From Asterias rubens (Eukaryota): DNA of 64,000 nt. Location of the stretch: positions 17,608,001 to 17,672,000 of the forward strand of contig NC_047062.1 of the NCBI RefSeq assembly GCF_902459465.1, in the 5' to 3' direction. The first letter of the stretch is position 1. Each line of letters begins with the position of its first letter. The translations under genes were made by a program, and so were the position numbers. Below, piece by piece: positions 34,001-53,900 of this stretch. The notes under the pieces are model-generated. The model ran no database searches, was not told the origin of the DNA, and was given only the letters and a program-made list of their open reading frames with translations.

Positions 34001-37000
34001 TAAAAAAATAAATGGTTTGAATTAGCATGCTCTTCAAACCTCATGAAAAGAAAACTTTATAGGAGATTATGTTTTATAGCTTTGAACATCCTTTGTAACA
34101 GTTGCAATGTTGCATCATAAACCTCAAGTCACTTCTGTCTATATACAAATATCCGTTTTTAAAGAGAAACTCACTTAAAATACTAAAGCTACTCTTGATT
34201 TAAAAAATAAAACCAAAAAAATTGAAGGCTAAATGTTCTTACCTTCTTTCAGGAAATTAAGGTATTTGCCAATCTGTTCTTGGATGAGCTTTGTCCCTTT
34301 AAGACGCGTTATCTCCTTCAGTATTCTAGACTCCTCCGTGTTCTTCTTCGTTGTGACGATAACCTTGAACGACAATTGAGACATTTCTTAATGATGTGAT
34401 CACTTTGAGAATTTTCAGACTACTACAATTCCTCTACTTTCTCACCACTTTGGGAACATTCAGCTTTCCTTGTATGATTTGTTACACTTCTTCTTTTAGC
34501 AAATCATACGAAAATAGAGGTAGCTGTAGCAGTAACACCATGTGTGTATCTACTTGCCAGGTAGAGTTTGTTCTTTAGAGGAACTGTCTTGCTATATATT
34601 TTACTACCCACTAAAACTACTGTTGCAAACTGCTTAAACAACAACAAATGACCTAAAGAGCATTCTGTATCTACAAGGGGCCAATCACATGCATGTATTA
34701 AAATTACTCTTCAACTTACATCGATCTCGTCCAAGTCATTTTCGTCGCTTATGTTTGGGATTTCCACATTCCCCGTCAGTTCAGTAGTGCAATCCTTTAG
34801 GTTACCTGGCAGACCAACAAAACAAGCCTGAATTAAACCAAAGCATCAGAAATTCTTCTCCTGTCTTTGTTTGATGTTGATCGACTCTGTAATGTAGTAC
34901 AATCGGCTCTTGTTATCAAAGCAGTTATGAAAAGTATACTCTGAAGTAAAGTAGCAAAAAAAAAAAAAGAAAAAAAAAAAAAATCTACTTTTTGTTCCTC
35001 CGTTTAGTTAAAATGATTTAAGCTGGCCAGTCCCAGCCACTTGGTTATAACGAGAGTCGACTGAACTACAAAGCTAAATGAAACTTGGCTTGTCGTGGAT
35101 CAAATTATATTATCAATCTTATTTCCATGTACGTTTTAATGAATTCGGGTCATCTCGTACCCAAGTCAACTCGTACCCAAGTCAACTCGTACCCAAGTCA
35201 ACTTGTACCCGAGTCAACTCGTACCTGAGTCAACTCGTACCCAAGTCAACTCGCACCCAAATAAATGTTTAAAATTTTTTTTACTCTACTCGTACTGATA
35301 AATATTGTAGTTTAATTTATTTATTTATTTATATTGTTAATCATACATTTAGCTATTCATTGCTGCAATGATTTTGTTTTCTTGGTTTTTTTTCATGTTG
35401 CAGTTTTTTTGTTACTTAGGCCCTACGGTGGGGAAAATTAATCAGAGAACTTTTTTTTTAATATAGGCTTGTTAGAATGAATTTTTTGGTTTTTTTTATT
35501 CGGAAAAAGATAATAAGAACTTACGCAAAGTGTTTTGGTTGGAAAAAGTGGAACAGTATATTTGTTAAAATGTACTTGTTATCGGAAAACGATAATCAGA
35601 ACATAACGCAAATGAATGAATTGAATGAATTCTTACCATGAAATTTTCTTTTGGGAACACTTTAACAGGAAAAACACCAAGGTAAACATGAAGGGTTGCG
35701 TTTTATACATAGTATATTTTTTCATTGAAAATAATTGGTCTCATATGAACATGGAGGTCGAAATATTTATACCTCCTTGATAACGAAGAACTAGTGTGCA
35801 TCTAATCTGCTCAACGCCTTTCACGGCGACCCTTCAACACGGGAATTTAAAAGAAACCACAATGGATATCTGAATGAGTATCCTAGCGGAAAAAAGGCAG
35901 AAATGAGATGAACAAACATTATTAAAAACGAAATTCGTGAGATTATTATTAATAAAAGTGAGCTCCATATGATGGTAGAACATCATTTTTATTTCCTATC
36001 GCTTACAAAATCACGTCGCACGGAAATTCTCCGTTTCGGCATACAACGTACGTTGTACGGTACGAGTTGACTTGGGTACGAGTTGACCTGGGTACGAGTT
36101 GACCTAGGTACGAGTTGACTTTGGTACGAGTTGACTTGGGTACAATATTTTGGGTACGAGTTGACTTGGGTACGAGTTGACTTGGGTACGAGTTGACCTG
36201 TTTCGCGTTTTAATATTATTGTGTAATTAAATCAGTTGAGTGAAGTTTTGGTAGTTTGGCTGGTGTTTTTCTTTCAACCCCATTTACATTGAAAACTGCA
36301 ATGATGTCCACTTAATAATATGCCATGTCTGTCATAAGTTACACTTGAACTGTCAAATTTGCAGTAAAATGTGAAGACTGATTGAAACCAATTAAAAACA
36401 CTAATCCTAAAAACTTCAGTTTGGGAGCAGGTATGTACACTGCGGACACGTTCTTTGATTGACAATTATGATGGTGAGATTTATGTCGACAAGAAGAACA
36501 AACAGGTATACCTTTCCATTCCAATTTGATGCTCCATTCATAGAAGAAAATGAGTTTCCCTTTTCTGTTACTGGCAGAGGCCTCTCCATCTATACTGTTT
36601 AATTCCTTGATCAAGCATTCACCTGCAATCAAAACAACAACAACCAACCTTAAAATACCATTTGTTTTTTACCCTTACAACTGATGTGAAGTAGAAATAT
36701 TCCTCCAAAATTCAAACAGATAAAACTCAGCATAATGGATAACGGACAAACCTTTGTCATCTTTTATCTTCAGTCCAACAAGAAGTTCTTCCAGTTTCTT
36801 CTTAGACCAACTAGACACATCTCTCTCGGTCCTGTTGATCAAAGATATATAAATTAGGAATTGAATGACTATTGTGTACCAGGCCGTGTGTACGCAATCC
36901 CTGTTACCTTAGACACAAAATTGATAGGTTAAATAAAGGCAATGAACACTTTTGGTAATTATTTAAAATAATCGTTAGCAAAAAAAACTTACTTGGTACC

Positions 37001-40000
37001 AAGAAATGGAGGAGAGCAATTTTGGGTTGGGTCTTTGTTTTCGTTTGAACACATTTTTTCCCCAGCCCAACACCATAGAATAAAATACTTATTAAAAAAC
37101 TTACAAAACAATGTAAAAAAATTAAATTAATGGTTGAACTAGAAGACTGTTGTAGCATTGTAAGCGGTAGCGCGATATTGACATTTCCTATTCTGGCCGC
37201 ACAAACAAAAAAAGACTTTTCAAATTGAACATTACTTCAACCTTACATACTGTCTGAGCTTCAAATTACTCCTGTACATGTAGGTCAATAAAACTCTCTT
37301 CTTTTATAATCCTTTTGAAAAATGGCAAAAGTTAAATTTTTTTCACACATTAAAAAGATTTAGAGCATGGTCACCGTTGCGACATTTTGGAACTTTTTTG
37401 ACAAATAAATCGGGTGATCGTTTTCAATTAATACCGCCCTCTCTTGACTTCCAATTGAAAAAATACCGCCATCTGTAGATAGAGAGAGGTTCAGAAAGAT
37501 CGTAGTGCTTTTTTCTCTGTCTGAATCGGTGAAGAAAACAGGTTTTAATAAACAATCAGCAACGGCCGGGTATTCTGTCAAACCTATATCAGTAAAATCC
37601 TTGTCCATTTCTGAGTAAGAAAAGTTCGGTTTCGCTCCCGCATGAAGTTGTGCATGGAATTTGCCGAGGTTTTAATTAATCCTCTCGGTTAAAGTTCTCA
37701 GTAAAATCTCATTTATGAACATTTGAGTGTGCGTTAAGGGATAGGGCAGCAAGCGTAACAGTGCGAGGGGTCTTACTTTTTAACAATTTTTTTTACCTCA
37801 GTCGGCAACCAGAAGAGCCCAAGTGTTTGTTGTCTTTTGGAAGGCATAAGTAACTAACGAAAGCACCTAGACAGTTTGCACCAATGAATTTCTCCTGAGG
37901 AGACCTTTAGTTTGATGTAAAATTTTAATTTATTTTGGGGAAAAAATTGAAAAAATGCTAATTGTTGGTTACTGTAGTGTATGCATCCTTTCTCTAACCC
38001 TACAACTAACCATATTAACCCCAACTGTTCGCTGTATGAAAGACTTCTAATTCTGTATATCATATTAACTATGGTGCCTAGAGAGGCACAACAATATTTT
38101 GTATTTTCTGATACAGCGCAGAGAGAGTAGACAGTCACCGTCCATGACCAACATGCCCACGAATCACGATAAATTACACGTATGACTATCTAAATCTAGA
38201 CCTGTGGCTATATAAGTAGGCCGGTCAACAGAAATTACAAATTCATAATATATAGCTAAAAGTGTTACCATTAGAAAGATCTCTCCGAGGCGATTCCAAT
38301 TTTTTTTACCTTGTATCTCTAGGACATACGGTTTTCGAGTTATGGTGATTTAAAATGTCTGGAAAACGTCGTTTTGTCATACCAAAACTCATCGTTTTGA
38401 CAAAAAGTGTCAAAATACTGTTTTTACAAGGCTATAATTTCATATTAATACAATTTAACAAACTAAAAGCAGCTTTTTCCTGAAGCAAACATCCCATATG
38501 TTACCCAAAAAACAAAAAAGACATACCAAAATACACACACTGTAAAATAGAGGGTCTTGAAAATTACAATTTATGCCATCAAACCTACTTTAGTCGTTCA
38601 AAAACAAGGAATTTACCCAAAAAGTGTGTTTTTGAAGGCAAAATAATTCTGGGTTAACATGGTGCATGCTACTTGTTCTGCAGGCTCTGGGTAGAGATGT
38701 GTCTCTATTTTCATCTTTTCACATTTGGTATGTATTACTTATTCATCACAATCGTTATGAATCACCAAAAAATGAAACAAGTCTCTGAATTCATGCGTTT
38801 TGAGGATTTCGAAGCAACTTAATATGCAAAAACTGTGTAACAACAAAACTACATTATGTAATTCCTTGCAAATTGGTACACAGTGGTGTTTTAAGATGCT
38901 TATTAAGATGACATTAATTAAATTGGGCCTTTACCTTTGCTAATCCTATTGATTGGCAAATTACATTTTTCGTATGCAAATTAGCTAATTAATATGCAAA
39001 AACTGTGTAATGTCAGAACGGCACTACGTATTTTCTTGCAATTTGGTACTCATTTGTGTTTTAAAATGGTTATTATGGTGACATAAATTAAAGTGCTATT
39101 TAATAAATTGATTCTGCTTTTGTTATTATGAGTGTGGAAATATAATAATAATAAATGCCCAGACTTTTGGCAAGTTGTCGGGGGTCTCGAGAGGAAGCAG
39201 CTTAATTTTATTTTCATTAATTCTTATTCTGAAGGTTTTTACAAAAAAAATTACAAAATAAAGTAAATCGTGTTTGCCAGCTTAACTATTGTTCACCATT
39301 TACATTTTATTTCTATACTTCAAAGCACTAATCTAATTTACAAGATAAAAAATAATGAAGTACTTGTTCATAAAAACCCTGAGAATCAGCCAAATTTTAC
39401 GTTTGTAAATAAGGAAATGAATAATGCATCATTTTTGGATATTCCAAAATTTAGGGGTGCTAAAAAATAGAACATACATTTTTTGACAGCTAATTTCTTT
39501 GTTTGGAAAAAGGTATTGTCATCTCAGTTCTCTAAATGGTTATTGTGATTAAAATCATGGTTTTAATTAATTAATTATCCTTAGTTCCCTATACAAAATG
39601 ATATATTTTTATAACATTACAAAGCGCACACCCCTCCCAAAAATGGTATAGCCCCACAAAACATGCCATACTGTTGCACAACAGAATGTGCATGTACACG
39701 TACGTAGGACTACTACACACATGCGGCCAGGTGGCCGTATGCTCAATGCACGTGAAATCCACACACACGTACACACAATAGGCCGATCGTTACTGGACTC
39801 ATGTCACTCACTCAAAAACGTTCACATTTCATTGGAGATACAATTTTCAGATGCTGTTTTCATCGTGAATGAGCACTAAAACTGTACAAAAGGTTAGTTT
39901 TTATGGAAGGAGAAATACTCGACTACCCATTTGCGGTTGCGCTTAGGAAATTACTCACCCTTTTCTTAGAGATCGCAAGTGAACTTTCTTCTGAACGTTA

Positions 40001-40935
40001 TAACTTTTTGGTCGAGCTTAACCCCCCAACAGCGCATGCGCCAAATGAAAGCTGAGGATCTAAGCTTTCGAATGAGACCTCTTGCGGTGAGATTGGACAA
40101 TGGCATCACCGGAATTCTTGCGATCGAAAATTCACTGTAACAATTTTTGTCGGCTACGGTTTCGTGAAGCTGAGCTTCACGCTGCGTATACTCAAGTTCA
40201 GAATGCTATAAAATTTATATTAAATACACAAAAATAACGAAACTTTAACAACATATGCAACCTATAAGTTTATTTTACTTCCAAAAAATTCACAGTCATA
40301 GCTCAAACAACAACAAAATTACAGCAATTCTAAAACGGCTATCTGTGTTGCCGATAGTCCGTATCCAGGTTGTGTTTGTGTGAGTGGTTGACCGGCCTAA
40401 TATAAGTTATCTATAGGCCCCTAAGTATTTTAAAGCTTTGTTACGTTGTTATATTGATTAATTTATTAATGATTATGAGTATTATAATTATATCCTACCT
40501 ACGTCCTAGTCCCAATTACAACTCAGTTTTTGAGGAGGAGAATACAAAAGGAAATGGAGGAAACTACATCAGTAACATCAAACCTTCACCCTCCTCAGCT
40601 TTTATTAAATAAAAAAAAATAGGCCTATCTCCTATATATATATATAAAAAATTCCCCTGAAAAATGTTGGTCAAATAAGGCATTTCTCCTTACTTTTTCT
40701 TGTTACGTTGAGGGCGCATGTCACTAATTTACTAAAATAAGTTTGCTTTACAATTTTTACATCAACAAGAAAAAAGACGACATAACCACTGCACAACATT
40801 AAACGTGACTGAAGACTCCACCAAGAAAAGAAAGGGGCGACAAGTCCATACTTACCAGTGCCAGTTGTTGACATTTGTGGCGTCCGAGCGCTCCTCCACG
40901 ATCCATCTTGGGTCTCCTTCTCCCCACTTAGCCAT
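31022..40935 (-). CDS. AHSA1: Activator of HSP90 ATPase homolog 1, 10 coding exons, ~345 aa
   Basis: complement join(40935-40856,36831-36752,36622-36512,34805-34720,34363-34243,33730-33651,33073-32918,32498-32397,31861-31813,31194-31022) = 1038 nt. MAKWGEGDPRWIVEERSDATNVNNWHWTE, NRKGKLIFFYEW, GNVEIPNISDEN, GGKFSLFDGNVTGEF, WRFKTWP, GTFGFGARLF. Confidence 0.97.
31400..31760. mobile_element. Inverted-repeat element in AHSA1 last intron
   Basis: TATATAACTGACATAAAGATCCTTGTCATTTGAT pairs with ATCAAATGACAAGGATCTGTATGTCAGTTATATA. Confidence 0.65.
35141..36205. mobile_element. Foldback/Mutator-like non-autonomous element with arms of 16-bp tandem repeats
   Basis: Left arm (CTCGTACCCAAGTCAA)n, right arm the reverse complement; flanked by the 9-bp direct repeat CGTTTTAAT (35132-35140 and 36206-36214). 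Confidence 0.85.
38217..40399. mobile_element. ~2.2-kb non-autonomous DNA transposon in AHSA1 intron 1
   Basis: 13-bp perfect TIR TAGGCCGGTCAAC/GTTGACCGGCCTA, flanking 7-bp direct repeat ATATAAG, internal repeated motifs, no long ORF. Confidence 0.65.
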
Positions 40936-41044
40936 TGTGCAGAATGAACCGAAAATGACTCAGTGAGTAATTTGATGGAAGAAACGTTGGAAATTTCTCG
41001 AATTTGACGAAACACACAAACACACGCGAGTCTCTCTCTCAGCA

Positions 41045-41198
41045 ATAGACCTTTTCGCAAATACTGGGGCGCGCGCGTAAAGCTTGGAATTAGGTGCATT
41101 GTGGTCCAGCTGGTATCAAAATTTTATCCATATCTATCCCACAATGCACCTCATTCAATAGTCTGCGCTTGCGCATTGGTATTTGCGATAAGGTCTAT
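41045..41198. mobile_element. MITE with ATAGACCTT(T/A)TCGCAAATAC TIRs, upstream of AHSA1
   Basis: ATAGACCTTTTCGCAAATAC ... GTATTTGCGATAAGGTCTAT. Confidence 0.75.
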
Positions 41199-41199
41199 G

Positions 41200-41580
41200 A
41201 ACTTCTGTAGCGTGCGCCCTCTGGTGTCAATTAATTACCAATTCATTCGTATAGGAACCCGAGAGATACGTAGTGCGACATCCGGTTTGACCTTGCGCGT
41301 TGAAGTCTTTGTGTAAACAACGCGCGATTTATGTAAACTTGGCGAGAAACAGGGCGCCCGCGCGCGGTCAAAATGCGTTCGTGGTGGCCCGAATTTTAAA
41401 AGTTTCCCTGTGAACTCATCAACGAAAACGTTAGAAAAACTGGCGGGAAAATAGTAGACTCATGAATATTTAACATCCAAACCGACCTACGTTAGCCAAT
41501 CATCATTCTAGGCCAAGCGTCACCTTCCATTCACATGTAGATCTGACGCGATCGACTGACTTCCGGACGCACATCAAGGT
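41200..41580. promoter_or_regulatory. CpG-rich putative bidirectional promoter with a candidate plus-strand non-coding first exon
   Basis: CpG-dense; CCAAT at 41496-41500; ETS-like ACTTCCGG at 41559-41566; donor AAG|GTAAAT at 41579; lies head-to-head with the AHSA1 start. Confidence 0.5.
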
Positions 41581-42697
41581 AAATAAACCCTTTTTTTTTT
41601 ACTTTTTGCCAAAGCCCCCCCAAAAATTTCTTCAGAATAATAACAAAAGTATAAACATAGATTGTATAAATTTGCGTGAATCTATGAAATTCCCAGTACA
41701 TGATTTCTATTTGTCATATTATTTTATGAATGTCGTTGGTTTTCAATTTACTGCTTGAATTTTTTTATTTTCGTTTTGTGTAAATCTCGTCAAGGTCAAT
41801 GGGGCAATTTGTAATTTGACACCCGCAACATTTCACGTGAAACGCGCTCACACGGACAACGCCACAAATGGAGTGCCGTTAAACGATGCGTTTGACGGGT
41901 GCTTTGATTGTGGTCGTTGGGGTCGCTTTACTCCTCGTAGTAAAAGTAAATTCTGCCCATTTAGGCAACGATGCTTTTGAACAAAAGGGGCCTGTACACG
42001 TAGCTGCTTTTTATGCTTATTAAAAATAAATAGTTCGGCAATCTTATGCAAATATTTCTGCCATGTATCAGGTCTAGTGTAACCAGTTATTAGTTAGAAA
42101 ATGTGGGGTTTTTATGAATGAAAAAAAAAAAAAAAAAAAAAAAAAAAAACATTCTTTTTCACAGCTCAGTATAAACACTCCTCTTCTAGCAGACTTCAGG
42201 AAAATAATTAACAAACAAACAGGCTTGGCCAAACCAAGTTTGTTTTTTATTAAAAGCATCCGTCTTTTCATAATAACATTAATAATAACCAAGTAACTAT
42301 GTAAACTAGGCGAGAGTTTAATTAATAAATGCAATCCATAGGCCTACAATAAAATTTTGTGACAGTGCAAATTTGGAAAACAGTAGTTCATTTTTAAAAA
42401 AACACATCTTTGTCTATTTGTATTGTGTAATTATTTTTGTGTAATTAATAGGCCTAAACGACTTTTAATGGTCTGTCAGGGAAAACCTCATCTGTATTAT
42501 AATTATTATTTTTTAACATTAAAAATTAAATCACATTGTCAAAGAAACAATTTGTGCAATAAACAAATTGTCAAAGAAACAATTTGTGCAATAAACAAAA
42601 TCTAAGTTTTAACTTTAAATTATTGTTAATATAATTCAAACTTTAACATTAATTTGTTTTTCCTGTTTTTTTTTCTTTTCTGTAATACAGATTCAAA

Positions 42698-45600
42698 ATG
42701 GATGAACATAAGAGTTTTCTGAAAAGGTTATGTAGACTGTGTGGGGGGCGGTGCTTGTCATCATTGGACACGAAGGCTGGGAAATGTGCTAAGAGTTGTG
42801 CCAAATACAGAGACAAAATTCTTAGCACATTTCAGGTTGACGTCTCCCATGATGAAGAAAGCACTCACCCCCCTCACATGTGCCATTCTTGTTATACTTG
42901 TCTGTTTCTTTTGCCTAGGAAAGCTGCCCCCGCCTGGCCACCCCACCCAAGAACAGGTGTCTGCACTGTTTGCACAAATTCTGTCCACCAACATCTCACA
43001 GCTGGTCGAAAAAAGAAGCAGAAACGCACAGGGGTTGGCAGGCCTAGGATTACCCCTGCATATGTAGAGCACTTTAGCAGTCTCCCCCCCTCACCCACAG
43101 TCTCCAGGGATAAGATTTCCAATTTTGAGCCATTGTCAAGTACAGCCTTGATAGAATGTAAAATTTGCACCCAGTTACTTGACAATGCCCTGGAGACACC
43201 TTGCATGCATCTGTTTTGTTCCGGGTGCTTGACAGCACACTATAAATCTTTCAGAGAACCTAGCGCCCCATGTCCAGTCTGTCAAGTACCAGTGCACTTC
43301 GAGAGCATCACTGCCCCCCGAGGATATTTTGCTGATTTGTTTTTTAGTACAGCTATGAAGTGCACAGCATGCAAGGTCCATGTAACTGTGGGTGAAATTT
43401 CAACCCATGTTTGTTCAGTTAACCCACCTACAGTTTCAATTGCAGATAAAATCGTTCAGCCATCCACAACTCAAAGTGAAGTCACCCAGATGTTGCTGCG
43501 TCCCCTGACTGCGCCGTTAACCCCTCAGATGGAGGCTCTCGGAGCACACATCTTGAAGACCAAGCTCGCCCAATCTGCAGACGGGTTAACCACACAGTAC
43601 AGCACCGGTGGTCTGGTGAGTTGAATTATTTCCCAACTTAAGCGTTGCATTAAATTATTTATTAAGTTTAAAACTATTTTCTTTGTGTTTTTTTCCTTTT
43701 ACCTCCATGCAAGGAATTTCTTAAAATGATTTGAGATGCTGATTATTTTGTATCTTTTTTTTTCTCATAATAAGCCTCTCATGACACTTTGTGTCCCCAC
43801 TCCTCGGAAAAGCAGCGAGGTTGCCTCCTCCAAAACCATCCGACGGCGCTCAGAGATTTTAGACAAGACCCGTAACCTTCTCAGCAAGGGTGCAACAAAG
43901 GAGCAGCACAAAGACGAACTCAAGCTATGCCACCTGCGAAAAGATCTGCAGGGCATGTTGCGGGACTTAAAGATCAACACCATCAGGATCCCCAACATGC
44001 AGCTCCTTGCTGCGAAGGCTCACCTGGGAGTCTCTTGGAAGCGCACCAGGAAATTGAAAAGATGGTTGAGGGAGTACAACATTCTCACCGAAGGAGAAAA
44101 CGCCATGCGTCATCAACAACGAGACGTCGTGGCGGACAACATCATTGCTGAAAACCTCCCCTTTTCATTCCCTGACGACGTCAATGGAGGAGTTACCATC
44201 AAGCCAGCCCCCTGCGTAGCTGTGAAGTCCCTTGTCGCTAAAGTTAGACAGCAACTAGATGCCTACCAGAAGTAAGAAAAATAGGAAAGTTGAAACAGTT
44301 CATTATTAATTTTTAAGAACATAATTGAATAGAATGCTTAAAATTTGCTCCTCTCCTCAACAGGAACAACGAGCTAACTTGGCACGAGGGCAATATCCCA
44401 CAGACCGAGGTTTGGGTCAAGATCGGAGGCGACAAGGGAGGCGGGACGTTCAAACAGATGTTCCAGATCGCCAACGTTGGACGTCCCAATGCCCTTAGAC
44501 ACACCGTAGTTGCTTGTGCTTTCGCAGCAGGTGATACCAGCAACAACCTCAAGATTGGTCTCCTGCGCTTCTGTCAACAAGTTGCTGAGCTGCAGTCCTG
44601 CACTTGGAAGAGCCACAACATCAGACTCTTCATGTTCGGGGACTATGAGTATCTCTGCCGAGTGTATGGAATCACCGGGGCTTCAGGTAAATTCAGTTTT
44701 GTTTTTCGAAGTTCAAAAAAGCAAAATGTAGACGTATGTTCATTTTATTTTTTTCTTGTATTGAATAGGGCGACACTGCTGTCTTTATTGTGACATCACA
44801 AAAGAGGACATGCGCCAGCCCCGGGAGGAACGGACACCATCCAGGCAGAGGACTCTACAGACCCTGGACGACGACCTCCGCAGATTCAACGATGATGGCA
44901 GTAATCTCTCCAAGGCCAAACTCTTCAACAACGTGATCAGAGAGCCAATGTTTAGGATCCCGCTGACACAGGTAAACAATTTGCTAACTGTATTTAGCGC
45001 TTATAACAATTTTGTTTTTTAATTCAATGCACGTCAATGCAAATGAAGTTACAAGTTAGTTTGTTTCTTACTTATTACAGGTTTGCCCCCCCGGACTTCA
45101 CATCAGTCTGGGGTTATACCTCAAGCATTTTAATAGCTTTGAAGGGGCATGTCATGACCTTGACATGCAAGTGGCGGCTGTGTTAGCGTTGCAAGATGAA
45201 CATCGCACCGAGGAAGACAATCCAGCACTTGGCTCCTGCTTCAAGAGTGTCGTCTCCGTGTTGAAGAGGGCCCGGCAACTAGATCTGCAGGCAGAGGCCT
45301 TGGATGAGGAATTCCGTCAGAAAGAAGAAGACCTTGCGGACACCATCATGTCATCTGTGGAGGGAAGTGCAGATCTTCAAGCTTACATCACTGAAACAAC
45401 TGCACTGCGAAAGCAACAACAACATCTGGTAAGTTTTCATAACATAAAATGTAAAACTGTCTGAGGGTTTGCTGGTAGAAATCTTTCCTTAAAATATTAC
45501 TTGCAATATTCCTTAAAAAAAAATTTCATCTCCCGATGTCACACAAATTTATTTCTTGGGAGACTTAGGTTATCTTTGCATTTACATCATACATTGCCTA

Positions 45601-46490
45601 AGAAGTAATATTTCAACGGTTTCTACCTTCAAACCGTGTTGTTTAATGTAAACCTGTGGATATTGTTTTGTGTCACTACAAAAAGTACCCAAAACCCAAT
45701 CATTTCTATTCACTATATTGCCCATGTTATTAATTTTGTTCAGTTGGCGGAGGCAAAGGATCTTCGAGAAAAGGCAGCACTTAAGCCAGGTCAAGGTCCT
45801 CTAGCTGGGCAACTTGACATCGTTCTCCAGGATTTCCGGGTGCAGCGACAAGCCTACCATGGGAAGAGTTTTGTTGGCAATCATGTCCACAAATGTTGCA
45901 AGGTATACAAATTTTATAAGACATTGTGACAAATAACAAGTATGACTAATAACAATTATAACTGATAAGTATTTTAGAGCTAAAATATTTTACCTATCTT
46001 ATATATAATGCAGGAAGAAAACATCAAACTCCTAACCGACGCAGTAGTCAACAAAACCCGAGATCTTTGTCCTTCCCTGGTGGGTGAAGCAAGAACAGTC
46101 GCTGCAAAGTATGCCAAACTCTTCCAGCTGTTTGGCACTTGTCACCGGACGTTTAACACTTCATCGGTCCTGGATGGCCCAGCCGTAGATGCATTAAGCC
46201 AGGACATTAAGAACTACCTGGCTTACTTTCGAGCCACTTTTCCATCTGAGAGTGTGCCGCCGAAGATGCATCTACTAGAGGACCATGTCATCTCCTGGCT
46301 GCGGCAGTGGCACTTCGGTCTTGGCTTCCACGGCGAGCAAGGAGGGGAGTCGGTCCACGCCCATCTCAACACCCTCCGGCGTGACGTCCGAGGACTGCAT
46401 GAAGAAGTGGACATTCTGCAGTCTGTCATCCGGACTCACTGGGTCATGACCAGCCCTGCCCATGCACCACCTGCTGCCTTTTCAAAATAA
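42698..46490 (+). CDS. RAG1/Transib-related DDE transposase (Chapaev-type) with Chapa zinc finger and RING finger, 7 coding exons, ~974 aa, apparently intact
   Basis: join(42698-43615,43775-44271,44364-44686,44769-44971,45081-45428,45744-45902,46014-46490) = 2925 nt; all introns GT-AG, no internal stop. H-x7-CRLCG...D-x4-H-x4-CxxC..W..H...CxxC N-terminal finger; C3HC4 RING CKIC..C-H..CSGC..CPVC; core VKIGGDKGGG, FGDYEYLCRVYGITGASGRHCCLYC, PPGLHISLG, FVGNHVHK, PKMHLLEDH, GEQGGESVH. Confidence 0.88.
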
Positions 46491-46548
46491 TTTCATTTTA
46501 TTAATTTCCAAATCCCAAGGTTCAATCCATAAAGAACTGGTCACTTTT

Positions 46549-47225
46549 TCATGATGTGTAAATAATATATTTGTAAATGTACCTTAATCTTTGGTGTACG
46601 AGCCGCAATATTTTTGAGGGTCAAAATCAATTTAATCTGCGACTTATATGCCTAAGATTGTGGTACAAGAAACGGTGTAAGTATGTATCCTTTTGTTAAA
46701 ATGTACATAAAATCATACGAATTCATGATGTGTAAATTATAAATTTGTAAATGCATCTTAATCTTTGGTGTACGAGCCGCAATATTTTTGAGGGTCAAAA
46801 TCAATTTAATCCGCGGCTTATATGCCTAAGATTGTGGTACAAGAAACATGTGTAAGTATGTATCCTTTTGAAGAATTTTACATAAAATCATATGAATTCA
46901 TGATGTGTAAATTACAAATTTGTAAATGGCCCTTAATCTTTAAGCGTATGATCCCAAAGATTTGAGGATCAAATTCAATTTCATCCGTGGCTTACAATGC
47001 CTAAAATTGTGGTACAAGAAACGTGTAAGTAAACAAACGTGTAAGTAAACAAACGTGTAAGTAAACAAACGTAAGTATTTCTCTTATATGCCCAAGAATG
47101 TGGTACAAAAAACAGGTGTAAGTATTTCTCCTATTAACAAAATGTACATAAACTCATAGGAATTCAGGGTGTGTAAATAATAATTTAAAAATGTACAGGT
47201 CTTAATCTTTGGGGTTTAAGCCGCA
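46549..47225 (+). repeat. ~175-bp tandem repeat x3-4 with an embedded short (AACGTGTAAGTAAACA-type) tandem run
   Basis: TCATGATGTGTAAA unit starts at 46549, 46723 and 46898, with a degenerate fourth copy; short tandem run about 47020-47075. Confidence 0.9.
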
Positions 47226-50200
47226 TTGCTCTTTCACTTTTATTGAATTCTTTTAGGCAAGATTAATTTAGAGTGTAAGTGATTAATTTAGTTCTCAATT
47301 TATTATTTATGCACTTACCAGGTGATTAAGTAAACACTACATAGCTGTCCTCAGAGGTATTTTCTTTCACCGCAATCTGTAGAAGCTGACGGCCACTGAA
47401 CTGGGGAGGGTGGGGGAAGGGGGGGGGGGGGGGGGGAGAGGTTAATTTTCAATTGAACGTCACATTATGTCACCGTGGTCCAGTGGTTAGATTGCAGGAC
47501 CTGCAATCTCATGGTTGTTGGTCCATCCTACCAAGCTAACCGCTGATTTCACAATGACTAGAACAAATTGTCTTGTTTCTGAACTCACAATTTCTTAATT
47601 TGTGAAATTCATAAGCATCTATAGACAAACATAAATAATTAAAGCAGGTATTTAAAAATTGGCTCGTCAAACACACTAAAATCCTGGTTCATATACATCA
47701 CACAAATTGCGAATGTGAAGTGATCTTTCCTTGTGTGTCAAAATTTTAAAAACAGCACAGGCCTACTTATTGGCCACCTAGTTCGCTTCAAAATATTGTA
47801 GGAAATAAATAAGTCTAAACAAAAAATTGTTTGAAAAAATACAATTTTAAAACAATATGTATGCATTTCTCTAAACATAGATAAAAATACACGTCAATTG
47901 TTTGTGCAAAAACAATAATCTAGTTTGAGCGTATAATTATCATAGATTGTCGCTAAGTTTCAAAATTAAGTTGTAGGGTTTTCCAGGTCTTTTTTTTTCT
48001 CAACATGAGTTTTTACCTGGTTTTTTACCCCACAAAGATGCAATCAGATGATGAAAATTGGAAGAAATATCAGTATGTACAATTGGGTATATTCTTTCCT
48101 AAATTCACCGAAAACAGTATTTAAAAATGTCAACAAACAGATCCCGTTCGTTTCCACATGGTTTTTATGATCAATCAACATGTTTTTTTCTCCTTCCATG
48201 ATCCTTCAGCTTCTCACACGTGGGTCGTTTATTCTTACATGTAAAAAATACTAAAAATGCAACGAGGTTTAGTATAACAACTATATGATCTTGACGACTG
48301 ATAACATTATTGGTGAATTATAATTTATTGTACGTCAGTATTGTGCATGGTCTTTCATCATTTATTGTCATTAAACTTGTATGGTGTATTCAATAAATTA
48401 AATAGCAGACAAATATTACCTGAAAGTGAAAGAATTGAGCCTCTCTCCACATGTTTTCTTAATAATCTTTTCCAATCCTTTGTGCATACATCGTGAGGTC
48501 GCGGTGTCAGATTACAATGCATTCAAGGAAGCTGTGTTGTGTGGTGGCACCCATGCTGGTTGCTGACCATGCACTGACCCATGGAGCAATCCATGACTGA
48601 CCACACCAAGCACAGACTGCCGGACGAACAGAATCTTGGACAAATGTGCCGAGTTCTGGTTGAAAAATTGACTTTAAGGAAATCTAAACAATCCTATTTA
48701 CGTATAAAATTACTATTTTGGTCAAAAAACTGCCAAAAAATGGCATATTCATGAACAAATTTTAAGTTGAAAAAAAAATTTAAGCTCTGTTCTACGGCGG
48801 ACAGGATCGTTGCAATCATCCTCGTTCACAAAATGATAGATTATATACCCTCTCAAAAAAGCCGTTTTTTAAATATATGAAAAATCCTCCAAATAAGTAT
48901 GAAAATCGTATTTTTACCACCATAATTACACCATTTTTGAAACGACGGTAAAATCTAAACACAGTAACTTGTGAATGAAAATTAAATCACAACGTAAACA
49001 TCGAACAAGCCCCTACTAATGCATATTCATTAAAAAAGCTTAGACTCCACCTCTGCCTTCTTAAACCCGCCTCCAAGTCGATGAGTCATAACTTTGTTTT
49101 TAAGAAGAAAAAAATACATATGCATGAGGAGATAATGACCGCGTCATATGACGTATTTGCTGCGCGTGCGCGCATTCCTTTGCGGTTACAGCGGCTACGT
49201 GGATATCACTGGAAATAATTTGTACGCGCGCCCTCTGTTGTCACGTGAAAGTCATGTGGTCTTCTTGTCCAAAATACAATGAAAAATGGAAGTATGACTT
49301 CGTTCTTTTATTTCGCGTTTCCGTGCCTGGTTGATTTTGCTGAATGGGCAGAAAAAGGCACTGTGGAAAGGCAAAAAAAGGGGAAACTATTCCTTCCCAC
49401 AATGCCTTTCGCCCTTTCAGCAAAATGAACCAGGTGGATGGGCGGATTTTTATTTAGTGTTTTAATCGACGGGGTTTTTTTTGGGACTAAAAAAAGGTAA
49501 GATTTTTGTTATCGATCAAAAGATCAACAACTTTACCTTACTTAAAGTCAATGTAAATAAAAAGTTACAGTCCTTTACACGGCAGGTATATCGACTTCCG
49601 TGGAGGGTCTCACCCAACAGGGCCCAATTTCATAGAGCTGCTAAGCACAACAATTTGATACCTTCCACCACTTGTTCACTAATTTTTACAAAAAAAAAGG
49701 ATATTTCAATCTCTTTGACTTTGACTTTGAGGTAAATTAGATAATTTCATCGTATCAAATGAAAAAGTGTTGGCGCCACACGGAAACTTGTTGTTTTGCT
49801 ATTGAAATATGGTTTGAGGAAATTAACTTGGAAGAAGTTTGTAAGATTTGGTTTGGCCTTGGAGCAAAAAACAAATCTTGTAATTTTTGCGATATTGTTG
49901 GTAATATTATTAGTTTTTATTACTAATAATTATATTATAAGTTCAAGTTGCCCACCCCCCACAAGTTTCAATGCAAGGTTATTTTATGCTTCCTACCAAA
50001 CAGATACAAAGGTTACAATTACATCTTTATATTCTTAGATCATGGAGGTAGATGCTTAGATAAATAAAAACTTGGACGACATTTGGATGAAATTCCAAAT
50101 CAATGTTAATCAGACTTTGTTATTATGGAATAAGTAATTATTGGGGCCTTGTGTACAATTTGTTTTCAGGCTCTTGTTTTCAGGTGACCAGAAGTTCAGA

Positions 50201-50939: not shown

Positions 50940-53900
50940 ATGGCGAACAAAGGGCGGTGGAAAAAAAGTCAACAATTTACCATAATAAGCCTGGGCGTTG
51001 TGTTTGTTGTACGATGGTCTAAGGCCACATTTTGTAGTCACACTTATTCAAGGATTAACGAGTTGCAGATCAAGGTAGAAAACACAAACCCCTGCAGGTT
51101 TGTAGCCTTTTGTCAATGCCTTCAAGGCTTGGTTGGAGAGCCGCGATTCCAAGTGACTGTAACGGGAGACCACACACACGCATGGTCGTCCCAGGCGCTC
51201 TGCTGTTTATGCAGTGAAGGCCTTGATAAAAGGCTAGCAGGTTTGAACTTTTACTCAAGAATAGACCAAGTACTGAAGGTCTGGAGACTGAAACATTCGG
51301 CCCATGTCTCCCAAGGCAATATACAGGAAACCACTTCCAGGCAATCTCAAGAAGAAAATGCATAAAACATATAAATGTTCACATTCTTTTATTGGGGATG
51401 ATAAGACACTGTTTGAAAAATTACTCAAGTGCTACCATAGTGATCCTGTAGCATGCACAGCACTGCAGTTGGTTGCCCTCAAGTTACTTGTGAAAGTTGC
51501 CTCGTGTGACAGTGCCTAAAGGTCTGTCAGCAAGAGGGTGGGGGGGAGCTCTTGACTGTGGAACAAACTCTCAACATCTTAAATGTATCGCAACAATAGC
51601 ACTGCATCCAGAATGGCAGTTCAGGGTTAAATGCTTTTAAATATAGTGAATTGAGAGACAGATTGTAGTGTGATGCTGATGATATATCAAAGACATGCTT
51701 TAAAAACAAATTGGGCAGAAAATATTGCTTAACAATTTTCTGCTAAGCAAAATTGAGCAGGTTGTACTTGTGACATGTAGTATGGCTGGAAACCTTTATT
51801 CTAGTAAGCACAATTTTATTGAAGTTGGGCCTTGGAATGTTTCTTGTCCGCTTGAAATATTTCAAACATTGTTTTTGTACACTAGAGATGGAGATCAAAT
51901 TTCTGAAGACCCGCTGGAAAATGTCAAGGTGTCCATCGATGAAAGTCGCCTTATTCATGTCACAGATGAGAGGTACCTGTCCGTTGCGTGGACCATCGGA
52001 GACTTAAGAAAACACTGGCACAATGTTAACCTGAGGTAAGAATTTCCAAGTTGCAGCTCCCTCCTACTTCGTGAAACTGACGAAGAGGCCTTCAAACTTT
52101 TAATTGAGGTAGTTAGCAAATAACACTGATAAGGGAAGACAGAGCATTGAACTTTTGAGAAAACGGTGCAGTTAACACCATGTGCCAGGACTTGGTGTTT
52201 CCAGCCCTTACTTGCGAGTTTATTAAACAATGTTTAAGATGACAGCAGGCAAGTAATCCCTTGGTTTTGATGATGTTGCTGAATGGCAATTGGAAAAACA
52301 CAGTCTCATGTTACATAACATACAACTGTTACCTACTTGGCAACCCCGCACAAAGATATTAAGAAAATAGGGATTCTTAGTGAGACCACACTTATAGACC
52401 GTATTGAATATGATATCACGCGGCTCAAATATCTGACCTACAAGATGGCGTCTGAGCGTGTGCGTGTGTGTGTGCGTGCATGTGCCGTAGAAATCAAATC
52501 GGAAATGTTGCGTGCTTCGATGATGTATGCGTTTGGACGCGCATACGGTTTGCCCTACAAGATGGCGACTTTTCATCGCAAAAAGGGGTTATTCAATACG
52601 GTCTATAGGGCTAGAAAGCACAGTTGGTAGAGCACTGGCACGTTAATCCTGAGGTTGGTGGTTCAAGTTCAACCCCAAACCATACTTGAATAAACATTGA
52701 TGAAGCCAAAGAGGGAGAATGAAACTCGGACTTTGTCATCTTTGAAAAGGAAAAGCCAACAAATAACCTGTCCTGAAAGAGTTTTTTAAATTGTTTGTAG
52801 AACTACACCTTAAGAGAGATTGGTTGAAGTTTTCACCATGAGACAGAATTTTTGTTTTGATTGTTTAATTCCTACAGCTCTGTGTTACTCCAAACTCTGG
52901 CCAAGGGACTCTCCCCTTCATATTTACGCTTTGGTGGAACCAGAGCTAACTTCGCCACCTTCAAAGAGAAATCATTGTCATCGAATGCGAGAATGAAAAA
53001 GTTTTTTTTCACAGGTAACAACCATATTTTAACTTCCCAAATCCGCAGGCCTGGAACTATGAGGAGACCACAGAGGCTATGGGTGTATGTTGCCCACGGT
53101 CTTTGCCTTGGTGCCCCTTCAAAAGTTTCCCATAGACTTTAAGGTTTTCCAATCGAAGTGCCTTTTGCATAATGAAAATGGCCTTGCCCTTTCAAAGATG
53201 AAATTCCAGGCTTGAATCCCTCTCAGATTCTGAAAGAAAATGAAAACTACACACAAAACTACTCACAAAACTACTTTCAAAATGAAAACTATTCTTAAAC
53301 CCAACATTCTAATGACTCGACCAAACCAGCAGTCCCCTATTATGTTAGAACAATGAGAGCTCTAAGGTTACGCTTTTCAATTGTTTCAACAGGGAAAAGA
53401 ATGACAATAGAGTCTTTTGTTTGCCATTTTACAGGTACTGACTGGGACCGGATCAATGATTTCAGCCGTTCTGTGGGTTGGTCATTTATTTTTGACGTGA
53501 ATGCATTTTGGCGAAGAGACAACACCTGGAATCCAACCAACTTTGAGGCTCTGTTGAAGTATAACGATGGTAGAGGTTACAACGTCACAGCTTGGCAGCT
53601 CGGAAATGGTAAACAATATTGTAAATAAGTTTGTACAACAGGAAAGATTGGTTTTTGTCAGTGTAGTGTCTGTTTATAGGCAGCATTATACATAAAGAAA
53701 TTGTGTGTAAACACTTACACGTCTTGAGGTATAGCTTACTAAACAAACTCTGTACATGATGAAAACTTAAGTTCCAATTTCTAATCCTGTTGATGAAAGT
53801 TCTGGTTGATTACACCAGCCTTTTTTGTATTATTCTTGCTTTGTTCGAATTCTGTTCACTATTTTGCCCAAACATGCCCCCTTGGATTGTTCGCGCATGT

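What the first reader, a model, noticed from the sequence alone, without database searches (positions are those of the whole stretch)
42698..46490. Intact, intron-containing RAG1-related (Chapaev-type) recombinase/transposase gene
Seen: six short ORF-track fragments join through six canonical GT-AG introns into one 2925-nt frame (~974 aa) with no stop or frameshift. The order of motifs follows RAG1/Transib: first Asp in IGGDKGG (44431-44433), second Asp in FGDYE (44641-44643), GASGRHCCLYC (cf. RAG1 EASGSVYICTLC, CxxC zinc ligands), LHISLG (cf. LHCDIG), FVGNH (cf. MNGNF), HLLEDH (H-x4-H, cf. RAG1 H937/H942) and GGES Glu (46347-46349, cf. GNES E962). Known: Chapaev and Transib transposases are relatives of RAG1. 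Inference: the GGDKGG first motif argues for the Chapaev branch rather than a true RAG1L/ProtoRAG. A complete copy with all catalytic and zinc ligands is either a potentially active element or a retained host gene.
Basis: partly seen in the sequence, partly recalled or inferred. Interest (0 to 1): 0.88.

Follow-up and report, generated by a model that had tools for sequence, protein, structure and literature searches.

The report
Intact RAG1-like Chapaev transposase gene
This sea-star DNA holds a complete, spliced gene for a transposon-type DNA-cutting enzyme built like RAG1, the enzyme that assembles vertebrate antibody genes; the enzyme family (Chapaev) is already known, but this copy shows no transposon ends and may have been kept by the animal.

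Summary
Seven exons (42698-46490, + strand) join through six GT-AG introns into a 2925-nt frame of 974 codons with no stop. All six intron positions recur in annotated genes of two other sea stars.

The protein belongs to the Chapaev family (Pfam DUF1280). Residues 1-260 are homologous to the RAG1 non-core region (NZD/Chapa finger, RING, zinc finger; profile E 3e-35). The catalytic core shows no significant sequence match to RAG1. A confident AlphaFold model of a 61%-identical sea-star paralogue does superpose on RAG1 from the nonamer-binding domain to the C-terminal domain (Foldseek 1e-14, Z 29). Only RAG1, amphioxus RAGL and Transib match it. All family-invariant Asp, Glu, Cys and His residues are present.

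The copy's status is the open point. No inverted ends stand out above chance. It lies between host genes AHSA1 and a heparanase-like gene. Purifying selection shows on its branch. Its nearest relative, in Acanthaster, is a pseudogene with one small collinear flank match. A second paralogue sits in the same host intron in Patiria and Acanthaster. I favour an immobilised, retained gene (about 0.5) over a mobile copy.

The scan has noted other Chapaev-like copies elsewhere in this genome; I could not check them.

The parts
42698..43615 (+). Exon 1, residues 1-306. It holds the Chapa/NZD zinc finger (about residues 1-115; ligands include C12, C15, C62, C65, C89, C92), a C3HC4 RING (C154-C195), a C2HC-type zinc finger (about 221-239), and a linker ending in TGG-L/P.
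   Evidence: PF12560 at 1.8e-8 and RING families. phmmer match to mouse RAG1 141-375 at 1.6e-9. Family profile match to RAG1 97-382 at 3.1e-35, 21wb NZD at 2e-17 and 1rmd at 2e-16. AlphaFold model pLDDT 86.9, with 1rmd at TM 0.68 and rmsd 2.6 A.
43775..44271 (+). Exon 2, residues 307-472. By fold it corresponds to an NBD-like helical region followed by the DDBD and pre-RNase-H region.
   Evidence: Splice model. Residues 1-66 of the paralogue model align with the RAG1 region from ~386 (NBD) onwards, and residues 67 onwards align with RAG1 from 460.
44364..44686 (+). Exon 3, residues 472-580. This is the RNase-H-like catalytic domain, with D495 (44431-44433, GGDKGG) and D565 (44641-44643, FGDYE).
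   Evidence: PF06918 DUF1280 at 4.1e-11. Both Asp residues are invariant or nearly invariant in the family. In the HMM alignment to zebrafish RAG1, D565 is in register with the Asp of the GTGYDEK motif.
44769..44971 (+). Exon 4, residues 580-647. It holds the CxxC pair C584/C587 (44780-44791), which corresponds to the RAG1 ZnC2 ligands.
   Evidence: The cysteines are invariant. They align with RAG1 CTLC and BbRAGL CTLC. The D565-to-C584 spacing is 19, the same as D708-to-C727 in mouse RAG1 by my recall of its numbering.
45081..45428 (+). Exon 5, residues 648-763. It holds the LHISLG motif (45096-45113) and the first half of a long helical (coiled-coil) insertion that has no aligned counterpart in RAG1.
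   Evidence: L, H and G are invariant in A5. The motif aligns with RAG1 LHCDIG. The paralogue model has long helices at 343-462, and about 130 residues do not superpose on RAG1.
45744..45902 (+). Exon 6, residues 764-816. It holds the end of the helical insertion and the FVGNH motif (45870-45884).
   Evidence: G and N are invariant in A1 and nearly invariant in A2.
46014..46490 (+). Exon 7, residues 817-974 plus the stop codon. It holds H902/H907 (46269-46286, equivalent to ZnH2 ligands) and GEQGGESVH with E924, E928 (46347-46349) and H931.
   Evidence: H, H, E, E and H are invariant in 51 sequences. phmmer found 1171 relatives at E<=1e-3. The C-terminal offset of the structural alignment (model 659 to RAG1 1005) places these residues on the positions recalled for RAG1 H937, H942 and E962 (inference).
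41496..41578 (+). Putative non-coding first exon and core promoter. It has a CCAAT box at 41496-41500, an ETS-type ACTTCCGG at 41559-41566 and a GT donor at 41579. It faces the AHSA1 gene head to head.
Evidence: Read directly from the sequence. This is inference only; there is no RNA evidence.
42654..42690 (+). Polypyrimidine tract and AG acceptor 7 nt upstream of the ATG, implying an intron in the 5' UTR.
   Evidence: The Acanthaster relative has the same layout just upstream of its ATG.
48855..49147 (+). Short conserved non-coding block 2.4-2.6 kb downstream of the stop codon. It contains the AP-1-like GATGAGTCAT and the near-palindrome ATAATGACCGCGTCAT. It is collinear with the Acanthaster locus L009 14675-14960.
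   Evidence: blastn match of 38 nt at 84%, E 5e-5. It is the best hit of the L009 downstream flank anywhere in the 64-kb window, and the second-best hit is collinear with it. The 16-mer has no inverted partner in the window.

Best explanation
The region 42698-46490 is an intact seven-exon gene for a 974-residue DDE transposase of the Chapaev family (Pfam DUF1280). This family shares its whole domain order with RAG1. The order is NZD/Chapa zinc finger, RING, zinc finger, NBD-like helices, dimerisation/DNA-binding domain, pre-RNase-H, RNase H with two Asp, a ZnC2 CxxC module, and a ZnH2/C-terminal module with HxxxxH and the catalytic Glu. A long helical insertion has no aligned counterpart in RAG1.

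By analogy with RAG1 and Transib, the inferred mechanism is as follows. The protein would act as a dimer. D495, D565 and E928 (or E924) would hold two metal ions. C584, C587, H902 and H907 would hold a structural zinc. The enzyme would nick and then transesterify DNA at specific end sequences. The RING finger could add E3 ubiquitin-ligase activity.

The status of this copy is inferred and less certain. It is most likely an old, immobilised copy without usable transposon ends. It appears to be transcribed from a host-type promoter shared head to head with AHSA1, and to have been kept open by purifying selection in the Asterias lineage. That would make it a candidate domesticated recombinase rather than a currently mobile element.
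For: Gene model: with six of six intron positions shared with annotated sea-star genes.

Family: DUF1280 in exon 3 and in 23 of 23 relatives. DUF1280 is the Chapaev family and clusters with RAG1 (PMC3985635). Chapa plus RING architecture is described for Chapaevs (PMC4411706).

RAG1 N-terminal homology: E 3.1e-35.

RAG1 fold of the core: AlphaFold model with pLDDT 91.6. All 49 significant PDB hits are RAG1, RAGL or Transib. Z is 29.1, against 11.4 for the next fold. The Swiss-Prot AlphaFold DB hits are eight RAG1 proteins, aligned from ~386 to ~1000.

Residue register. All family invariants are present in the window protein.

Status: inverted matches across the gene do not exceed shuffles (best 12, shuffles 10-16). 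There is no second copy in the window. Host genes lie 1.8 kb upstream and about 6 kb downstream. dS to the Acanthaster relative L009 is 0.84, close to the 0.75 between the syntenic Patiria and Acanthaster paralogues, so a split at speciation is plausible. Third positions group the window with L009, and the ratio of position 1+2 to position 3 branch length for the window is 0.35, well under neutral. A flank block is collinear between the two loci. The paralogue lineage sits in the same adenosine-deaminase intron in two species, is intact in both, and has dN/dS 0.18. This shows that immobile, conserved members of the family exist in sea stars.
Against: There is no transcript evidence. Chapaev ends can be short: the Antedon element has a 13-bp inverted repeat. 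A repeat of that size in this window would not stand out from chance, so 'no ends' is weak evidence. The nearest relative (Acanthaster L009) is a pseudogene with frameshifts and three in-frame stops, so the lineage is dispensable in that species. AHSA1 is not within 8.6 kb upstream of L009, so positional orthology rests on one 38-nt block plus one weaker collinear match. Codon positions 1+2 prefer a different topology from position 3. Relatives are recently mobile in a crinoid (99.97% identical copies at two loci). Earlier unchecked notes report other Chapaev-like copies with ends in this same genome. The genome-wide copy number of this gene could not be measured.
Confidence: 0.55

Rival explanations
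1. This is a full-length copy of an autonomous Chapaev transposon that is still mobile or was mobile recently. Its terminal repeats are short or bipartite, so I missed them. Selection at the level of the transposon lineage, not the host, explains the intact frame.
For: All catalytic and zinc ligands are intact. The family is mobile in Antedon: a 6.56-kb unit is 99.97% identical at two loci and has only a 13-bp inverted repeat. Many paralogues occur per echinoderm genome. Earlier unchecked notes report Chapaev-like elements with asymmetric ends elsewhere in this genome. Inverted matches of 11-13 nt cannot be told from chance here.
Against: No inverted pair brackets the gene above chance in the window or in the Acanthaster relative. 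There is only 1.76 kb between the ATG and the first coding exon of AHSA1, and that stretch looks like a CpG-rich host promoter with a 5'-UTR intron. No close relative (over 75% identity) was found in the protein libraries. dS to the nearest relative fits a split at speciation, and a flank block is collinear.
Confidence: 0.25
2. This is an immobilised relic that is no longer under any selection. It is open only because it lost mobility recently, and it is heading for the decay seen in Acanthaster.
For: The Acanthaster counterpart and a related fragment from a Tara metagenome are decayed: stops, frameshifts and an 11-codon deletion. The window's ratio of position 1+2 to position 3 branch length (0.35) is only a little lower than that of the pseudogene branch (0.42). 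None of the protein libraries searched returned this gene's own product.
Against: The window's branch carries about 0.39 substitutions per third position. By a rough estimate, neutral change of that size would be expected to put tens of stops into 974 codons, and none is present. Every family-invariant residue is kept. All six splice sites are canonical.
Confidence: 0.15
3. This is a true RAG1-like (RAG1L/ProtoRAG, TransibSU-type) gene rather than a Chapaev.
For: The domain order is collinear with RAG1 over its full length, and RAG1 is the best structural match.
Against: No RAG1-core Pfam family was hit at E<=1. A core profile found no RAG1 or Transib sequence in the PDB at E<=10. Structural identity is only 12-16%. 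DUF1280 is matched throughout the family. No RAG2-like gene lies next to it.
Confidence: 0.03

Closest known systems
Chapaev transposases with a Chapa domain plus RING finger (Kapitonov & Jurka 2007; Kapitonov & Koonin 2015, PMC4411706; Pfam PF06918 DUF1280; placed in the CMC superfamily by other authors)
   Same: The core matches DUF1280. The N-terminus has a Chapa/NZD zinc finger followed by a RING. The gene contains introns. The family occurs in animals, and here its members come from echinoderms, hemichordates, cnidarians, sponges, molluscs and nemerteans.
   Different: No terminal inverted repeats or target-site duplication could be shown for this copy. It lies between host genes next to what looks like a host-type promoter. 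It belongs to an echinoderm-specific clade. Sea-star members of that clade include a paralogue fixed in one host intron in two species.
Vertebrate RAG1 (V(D)J recombinase subunit), e.g. mouse RAG1 in PDB 6oem, 4wwx, 1rmd and 21wb
   Same: The whole domain order is shared. The N-terminal region is homologous by sequence (E 3e-35). The core has the same fold from NBD to CTD (Z 29). The D, D, E, CxxC and HxxxxH positions correspond, and the D-to-C spacing of 19 is identical.
   Different: Core identity is only 12-16% and is undetectable by HMM at significant E-values. The first motif is GGDKGG. D1 to D2 is 70 residues here, against 108 in RAG1 (D600 to D708, by recall). The protein has an extra helical insertion of about 100-130 residues. 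There is no RAG2 partner gene, and no known RSS-like substrates.
Transib transposase (HzTransib, PDB 6pqn/6pqx) and amphioxus ProtoRAG RAGL (PDB 6b40)
   Same: The catalytic core has the same fold (Z 24.1 for each; Foldseek 3.5e-7 and 3.6e-11).
   Different: Canonical Transib lacks the Chapa/NZD and RING domains. ProtoRAG carries a RAG2L gene and 5-bp target-site duplications with RSS-like inverted repeats. Neither feature is seen here.
N-RAG-TP of Aplysia californica (Panchin & Moroz 2008, as cited in PMC8355894)
   Same: It is an invertebrate mobile-element protein with an N-terminal region like that of RAG1.
   Different: I could not read the original paper or its sequence, so the relationship was not tested. 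The 2015 tree includes Aplysia among its species.

Membership tests
Chapaev transposase family (PF06918 DUF1280) | Match to the DUF1280 profile above Pfam's gathering score | tested here: met
   Exon 3 alone scores 43.3 bits against a cut-off of 25 (E 4.1e-11). All 23 of 23 full-length relatives match, with a best E of 2.2e-24.
Chapaev transposase family (PF06918 DUF1280) | N-terminal Chapa zinc-finger domain, followed by a RING finger in some subgroups | tested here: met
   PF12560 and RING hits. The cysteine and histidine pattern is conserved across 22 N-termini. The profile matches the RAG1 NZD structure 21wb at 2.2e-17.
Chapaev transposase family (PF06918 DUF1280) | Conserved DDE triad with the family motifs GGD[KH]GG, FGDY and GEQGGE | tested here: met
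   All are present in the window protein and sit in invariant or nearly invariant columns.
Chapaev transposon (mobile element) | Terminal inverted repeats and a target-site duplication flanking the gene | tested here: inconclusive
   No inverted pair exceeds chance (best score 12, shuffles 10-16). However, a 13-bp repeat like that of the Antedon relative would not be distinguishable from chance.
Chapaev transposon (mobile element) | Multiple near-identical copies in the genome | not testable with these tools
   Only this 64-kb window of the genome is readable, and it holds no second copy. Earlier notes mention other Chapaev-like loci, but I could not check them.
RAG1 / RAG1L / Transib fold group | RAG1-core fold: NBD, DDBD, pre-RNH, RNH, ZnC2, ZnH2 and CTD in that order | tested here: met
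   Tested on a 61%-identical paralogue. Foldseek gives 1e-14, VIA-align gives Z 29.1 over RAG1 460-1005, and the AlphaFold DB match runs from ~386 to ~1000.
RAG1 / RAG1L proper | Significant sequence match to RAG1-core profiles | tested here: not met
   No RAG1-core Pfam hit at E<=1. The core profile found nothing in the PDB at E<=10. A sub-profile ranks RAGL and RAG1 first, but only at E 0.3-0.7.
RAG1 / RAG1L proper | Adjacent RAG2-like (Kelch/PHD) partner gene | tested here: not met
   The neighbours are AHSA1 and a heparanase-like gene. No such open reading frame was seen in the flanks.
Domesticated transposase gene | Same genomic position in distant species, plus purifying selection | tested here: inconclusive
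   For the window's lineage there is one collinear 38-nt block plus one weaker match with Acanthaster. There is no upstream synteny, and the Acanthaster copy is a pseudogene. For the paralogue lineage the criterion is met between Patiria and Acanthaster: the same adenosine-deaminase intron and dN/dS 0.18.

The most novel reading that the evidence does not exclude
Sea stars may carry an old, domesticated family of Chapaev-derived, RAG1-architecture recombinases that kept every catalytic and zinc ligand. At least two paralogous lineages would predate the split of forcipulatid and valvatid sea stars. One is fixed inside an adenosine-deaminase gene intron in Patiria and Acanthaster. The other is the gene in this window, next to AHSA1, and has been lost in Acanthaster. 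If so, this would be a second, independent host capture of a RAG1-type cut-and-paste enzyme in deuterostomes, possibly still cutting DNA at host sites.
Probability: 0.35. Interest if true: 0.8.

Novelty: new member of a known kind. Interest (0 to 1): 0.5.

Why it matters
Chapaev transposases are the only proteins besides RAG1 and RAG1L that carry the NZD/Chapa finger and RING in front of a RAG1-fold core. They therefore bear on how the V(D)J recombinase was assembled.

The structural result here fits the view that the whole architecture predates the split between Chapaev and the Transib/RAG group (PMC4411706). A Chapaev-family core superposes on RAG1 from the nonamer-binding domain to the C-terminal domain, and the zinc and catalytic positions correspond.

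If this copy and its sea-star paralogues are host genes that still cut DNA, they would give an experimentally tractable case of a RAG1-like recombinase recruited outside vertebrates. If it is simply a transposon copy, it is an ordinary member of a described family. It would then be useful mainly as an intact sequence for transposition assays.

Tried and rejected
1. The spliced protein could not be submitted as one sequence, so exons were searched separately. I used full-length relatives returned by the searches for alignments and for folding.

2. A search for the window's own protein among annotated proteins found none. I could therefore not learn whether Asterias rubens annotation includes this gene.

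3. The third word-index search, with full-length alignment A4, was meant to retrieve RAG1 or RAG1L sequences for a profile-profile alignment. It returned only two sea-star isoforms, so no hhalign against RAG1 was possible.

4. The C-terminal sub-profile A6 did not find RAG1 in the PDB. The correspondence of HxxxxH and the Glu rests on the offset of the structural alignment only.

5. Synteny with the crinoid and sea-cucumber loci: there is none within 10 kb. The apparent flank matches to the Patiria locus were interspersed repeats.

6. I considered GCGCCCTC motifs, seen near the Antedon element ends and twice around this gene, as possible transposon-end motifs. I rejected this. The motif is common in all echinoderm loci examined and looks like a CTCF site, and the two copies around the gene are in direct orientation.

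7. The Foldseek search with the exon-1 model did not return the NZD structure 21wb. Only the RING and zinc-finger part matched solved structures.

Full report
**Observation**

I rebuilt the gene from the window. Seven exons on the + strand join through six introns that all begin with GT and end with AG. The exons are 42698-43615, 43775-44271, 44364-44686, 44769-44971, 45081-45428, 45744-45902 and 46014-46490. The result is one frame of 2925 nt, with 974 codons, one terminal TAA and no internal stop.

A polypyrimidine tract and an AG lie 7 nt before the ATG, which suggests an intron in the 5' UTR. The window holds no second copy.

**Organism and neighbours**

According to an earlier follow-up note on a nearby stretch, the genome is that of the sea star Asterias rubens. 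I did not verify this independently.

AHSA1 lies upstream on the minus strand. Its first coding exon is at about 40.9 kb, 1.76 kb from the ATG. A heparanase-like gene lies downstream on the plus strand, from about 52.8 kb. Both were recognised from the translated reading frames, not by a search.

**What the protein is**

Pfam finds RAG1_imp_bd (PF12560, 1.8e-8) and a C3HC4 RING in exon 1. It finds DUF1280 (PF06918, 4.1e-11) in exon 3. It finds no RAG1-core family.

An exhaustive phmmer search with exon 7 found 1171 relatives at E<=1e-3. The full-length ones come from a crinoid, sea cucumbers, sea urchins, sea stars, a hemichordate, Hydra, a sponge, an abalone and nemerteans. All 23 that I scanned carry DUF1280.

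The literature equates DUF1280 with the Chapaev transposases and groups it with RAG1 among RNase-H-like enzymes (PMC3985635). It also describes Chapaev proteins as a Chapa zinc finger, followed in two subgroups by a RING, in front of a core distantly related to Transib (PMC4411706). A 2026 preprint links the Chapa domain to the RAG1 NZD (10.64898/2026.01.24.700457). The family assignment is therefore secure, and the architecture is already described.

**Relation to RAG1**

The N-terminal 260 residues are homologous to RAG1 by sequence:
- Exon 1 alone aligns with mouse RAG1 141-375 at E 1.6e-9.
- A profile of 22 N-termini matches RAG1 97-382 at 3.1e-35.
- The same profile matches the NZD structure 21wb at 2.2e-17 and the RING/zinc-finger dimerisation domain 1rmd at 2.4e-16.
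- An AlphaFold model of the window's own exon 1 (pLDDT 86.9) superposes on 1rmd at TM 0.68.

The core is different. A profile of 23 cores finds no RAG1 or Transib sequence in the PDB even at E<=10.

I therefore folded the core of the closest full-length relative that I could submit. This was Acanthaster planci LOC110988954, which is 61% identical to the window protein end to end. I used a 58-sequence alignment. The model is confident, with pLDDT 91.6 and pTM 0.83.

The structural matches are specific:
- Foldseek against the PDB returns 49 hits at E<=1e-3. All are RAG1 (best 1.1e-14), amphioxus RAGL (3.6e-11) or HzTransib (3.5e-7). The next hit is at E 0.087.
- VIA-align gives Z 29.1 to mouse RAG1 over residues 460-1005, with about 460 aligned residues at 3.6-4.6 A.
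- It gives Z 24.1 to RAGL and Z 24.1 to HzTransib. The next fold, P element transposase, is at 11.4.
- Against AlphaFold DB Swiss-Prot the top eight hits are vertebrate RAG1 proteins. They align from about residue 386, the start of the nonamer-binding domain, to about 1000.

About 130 residues of long helices do not superpose on RAG1. These correspond to window residues of roughly 690-790.

A sub-profile of the RNase H-ZnC2 region ranks RAGL and zebrafish RAG1 first among 177,635 PDB sequences, but only at E 0.3-0.7. The alignment pairs the FGDYE Asp with the Asp of RAG1's GTGYDEK motif, the CxxC with CTLC, and LHISLG with LHCDIG.

The spacing from that Asp to the first Cys is 19 residues here. 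That equals D708-to-C727 in mouse RAG1, by my recall of its numbering. The C-terminal offset of the superposition places H902 and H907 on the positions recalled for RAG1 H937 and H942, and E928 on E962. This last step is inference.

The window protein keeps every family-invariant residue. One caveat is that the fold test was done on a paralogue. Another is that I could not measure distances within the catalytic triad.

**Mobile element or retained gene?**

Evidence for mobility of the family:
- In Antedon mediterranea a 6.56-kb unit containing a 975-residue relative is 99.97% identical at two loci.
- That unit carries a 13-bp inverted repeat.
- Earlier unchecked notes report other Chapaev-like copies, some with ends, elsewhere in this genome.

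Evidence on this copy is mixed.

- No inverted repeat brackets it above chance. The best score is 12, and shuffles reach 10-16. A 13-bp repeat would not stand out, so this is weak evidence.
- The 1.76 kb between its ATG and AHSA1 is CpG-rich. It contains a CCAAT box, an ETS-type motif and a plausible donor for a non-coding first exon.

Two sea-star lineages exist.

- Lineage A is Patiria LOC119723080 and Acanthaster LOC110988954. It lies in an intron of the same adenosine-deaminase gene in both species. It is intact in both and has dN/dS 0.18 at dS 0.75.
- Lineage B is the window gene and Acanthaster locus L009:8626-12205. These share 68-70% protein identity and the same compact intron layout.
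- L009 is a pseudogene. It has frameshifts in exon 1, two stops in exon 2, one stop in exon 6 and a GEQ-to-GKQ change.
- A Tara metagenome fragment close to L009 has an 11-codon deletion next to the catalytic Glu.

The divergence figures fit a split at speciation:
- dS between the window gene and L009 is 0.84, close to the 0.75 of the lineage-A orthologues.
- dS to lineage A exceeds 2.
- Third codon positions group the window with L009.
- The window's ratio of position 1+2 to position 3 branch length is 0.35. The pseudogene branch is 0.42 and lineage A is 0.26-0.30.
- With about 0.39 substitutions per third position on its branch, by a rough estimate an unselected 974-codon frame would have acquired many stops.

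Evidence on shared position is thin. The best match of L009's downstream flank anywhere in the 64-kb window is a 38-nt block (84% identity, E 5e-5). It lies at the same distance and order downstream of the stop, and the second-best match is collinear with it. On the other hand, AHSA1 is not within 8.6 kb upstream of L009. Codon positions 1+2 also prefer another topology.

My estimates are about 0.5-0.55 for an immobilised gene kept by selection in the Asterias lineage, 0.25 for a mobile or recently mobile copy with ends I could not recognise, and 0.15 for an unselected relic.

**Mechanism**

The mechanism is inferred from the RAG1 and Transib structures and is not shown here.

- The protein would form a dimer that binds DNA through the NBD-like and DDBD regions.
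- D495, D565 and E928 (or E924) would coordinate the catalytic metals.
- C584, C587, H902 and H907 would hold a structural zinc.
- The N-terminal RING could act as an E3 ligase, as it does in RAG1.
- What DNA this protein would cut, if it is a host gene, is unknown.

**Novelty and score**

The family and its RAG1-like architecture are published, so this is a new member of a known kind.

Two points go beyond the papers I read. The first is the strength and extent of the structural match of a Chapaev core to RAG1, which includes the NBD region. The second is the indication that sea stars hold old, position-fixed, intact members of the family.

The scan has noted other Chapaev-like loci in this genome, including another seven-exon copy without visible ends (s1-178637). 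I could not read those loci. My interest score is 0.5.

Noticed in passing
window 32800-40940, minus strand: A multi-exon AHSA1 (Aha1-type Hsp90 co-chaperone) gene. Its first coding exon (MAKWGEGDPRW...) is at about 40905-40937, head to head with the Chapaev-like gene. It was recognised from translated reading frames only.
   Followed up: partly
window 52800-57800, plus strand: Exons of a heparanase-like (GH79-type) gene. It was recognised by eye from open-reading-frame translations and not searched.
   Followed up: no
window 41214-41229 (+), 49228-49243 (+), 56708-56723 (-): Three copies of GCGCCCTCTGNTGTCA, against 0.01 expected by chance. The motif resembles the CTCF consensus by my recall of it. 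Two copies in the same orientation flank the gene. The 8-mer GCGCCCTC is also over-represented in most of the other echinoderm loci fetched.
   Followed up: partly
window 41045-41104 / 41139-41198: A 60-nt inverted repeat (77% complementary, 34-nt loop) in the CpG-rich region between AHSA1 and the putative first exon.
   Followed up: no
window 46548-47230: Tandem repeats of about 174-175 bp start 58 nt after the stop codon, followed by 16-bp repeats at 47016-47072. They probably lie in or just after the 3' UTR.
   Followed up: no
window 42529-42592: Overlapping repeats of 16 and 32 nt (AAACAATTTGTGCAATAAACAAATTGTCAAAG) inside the putative 5'-UTR intron.
   Followed up: no
L002:9349-15940 and L003:9349-15909 (Antedon mediterranea): A 6.56-kb Chapaev element is 99.97% identical at two loci on different assembly records. 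It has a 13-bp inverted repeat GCACGTATCCGCG and subterminal GCGCCCTC motifs at unequal distances from the two ends. In L003 it is flanked on both sides by an identical 8.27-kb segment that carries an Nsp1_C gene.
   Followed up: partly
L007 and L008 (Patiria miniata, Acanthaster planci): The intact 995- and 996-residue paralogues lie within the span of an adenosine-deaminase (A_deaminase_N + A_deaminase) gene on the same strand in both species.
   Followed up: partly
L009:8626-12205 (Acanthaster planci): A pseudogene copy of the window's lineage. NCBI annotates only a 363-residue product from it (LOC110990640). A perfect 31-nt palindrome sits at 10604-10665, in its third intron.
   Followed up: partly
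L005 (Logan SRR29838373 contig, 1655 bp): An intron-less relative that is also missing the region matching residues ~649-769. It looks like a cDNA or a processed or deleted copy from an unidentified species.
   Followed up: no
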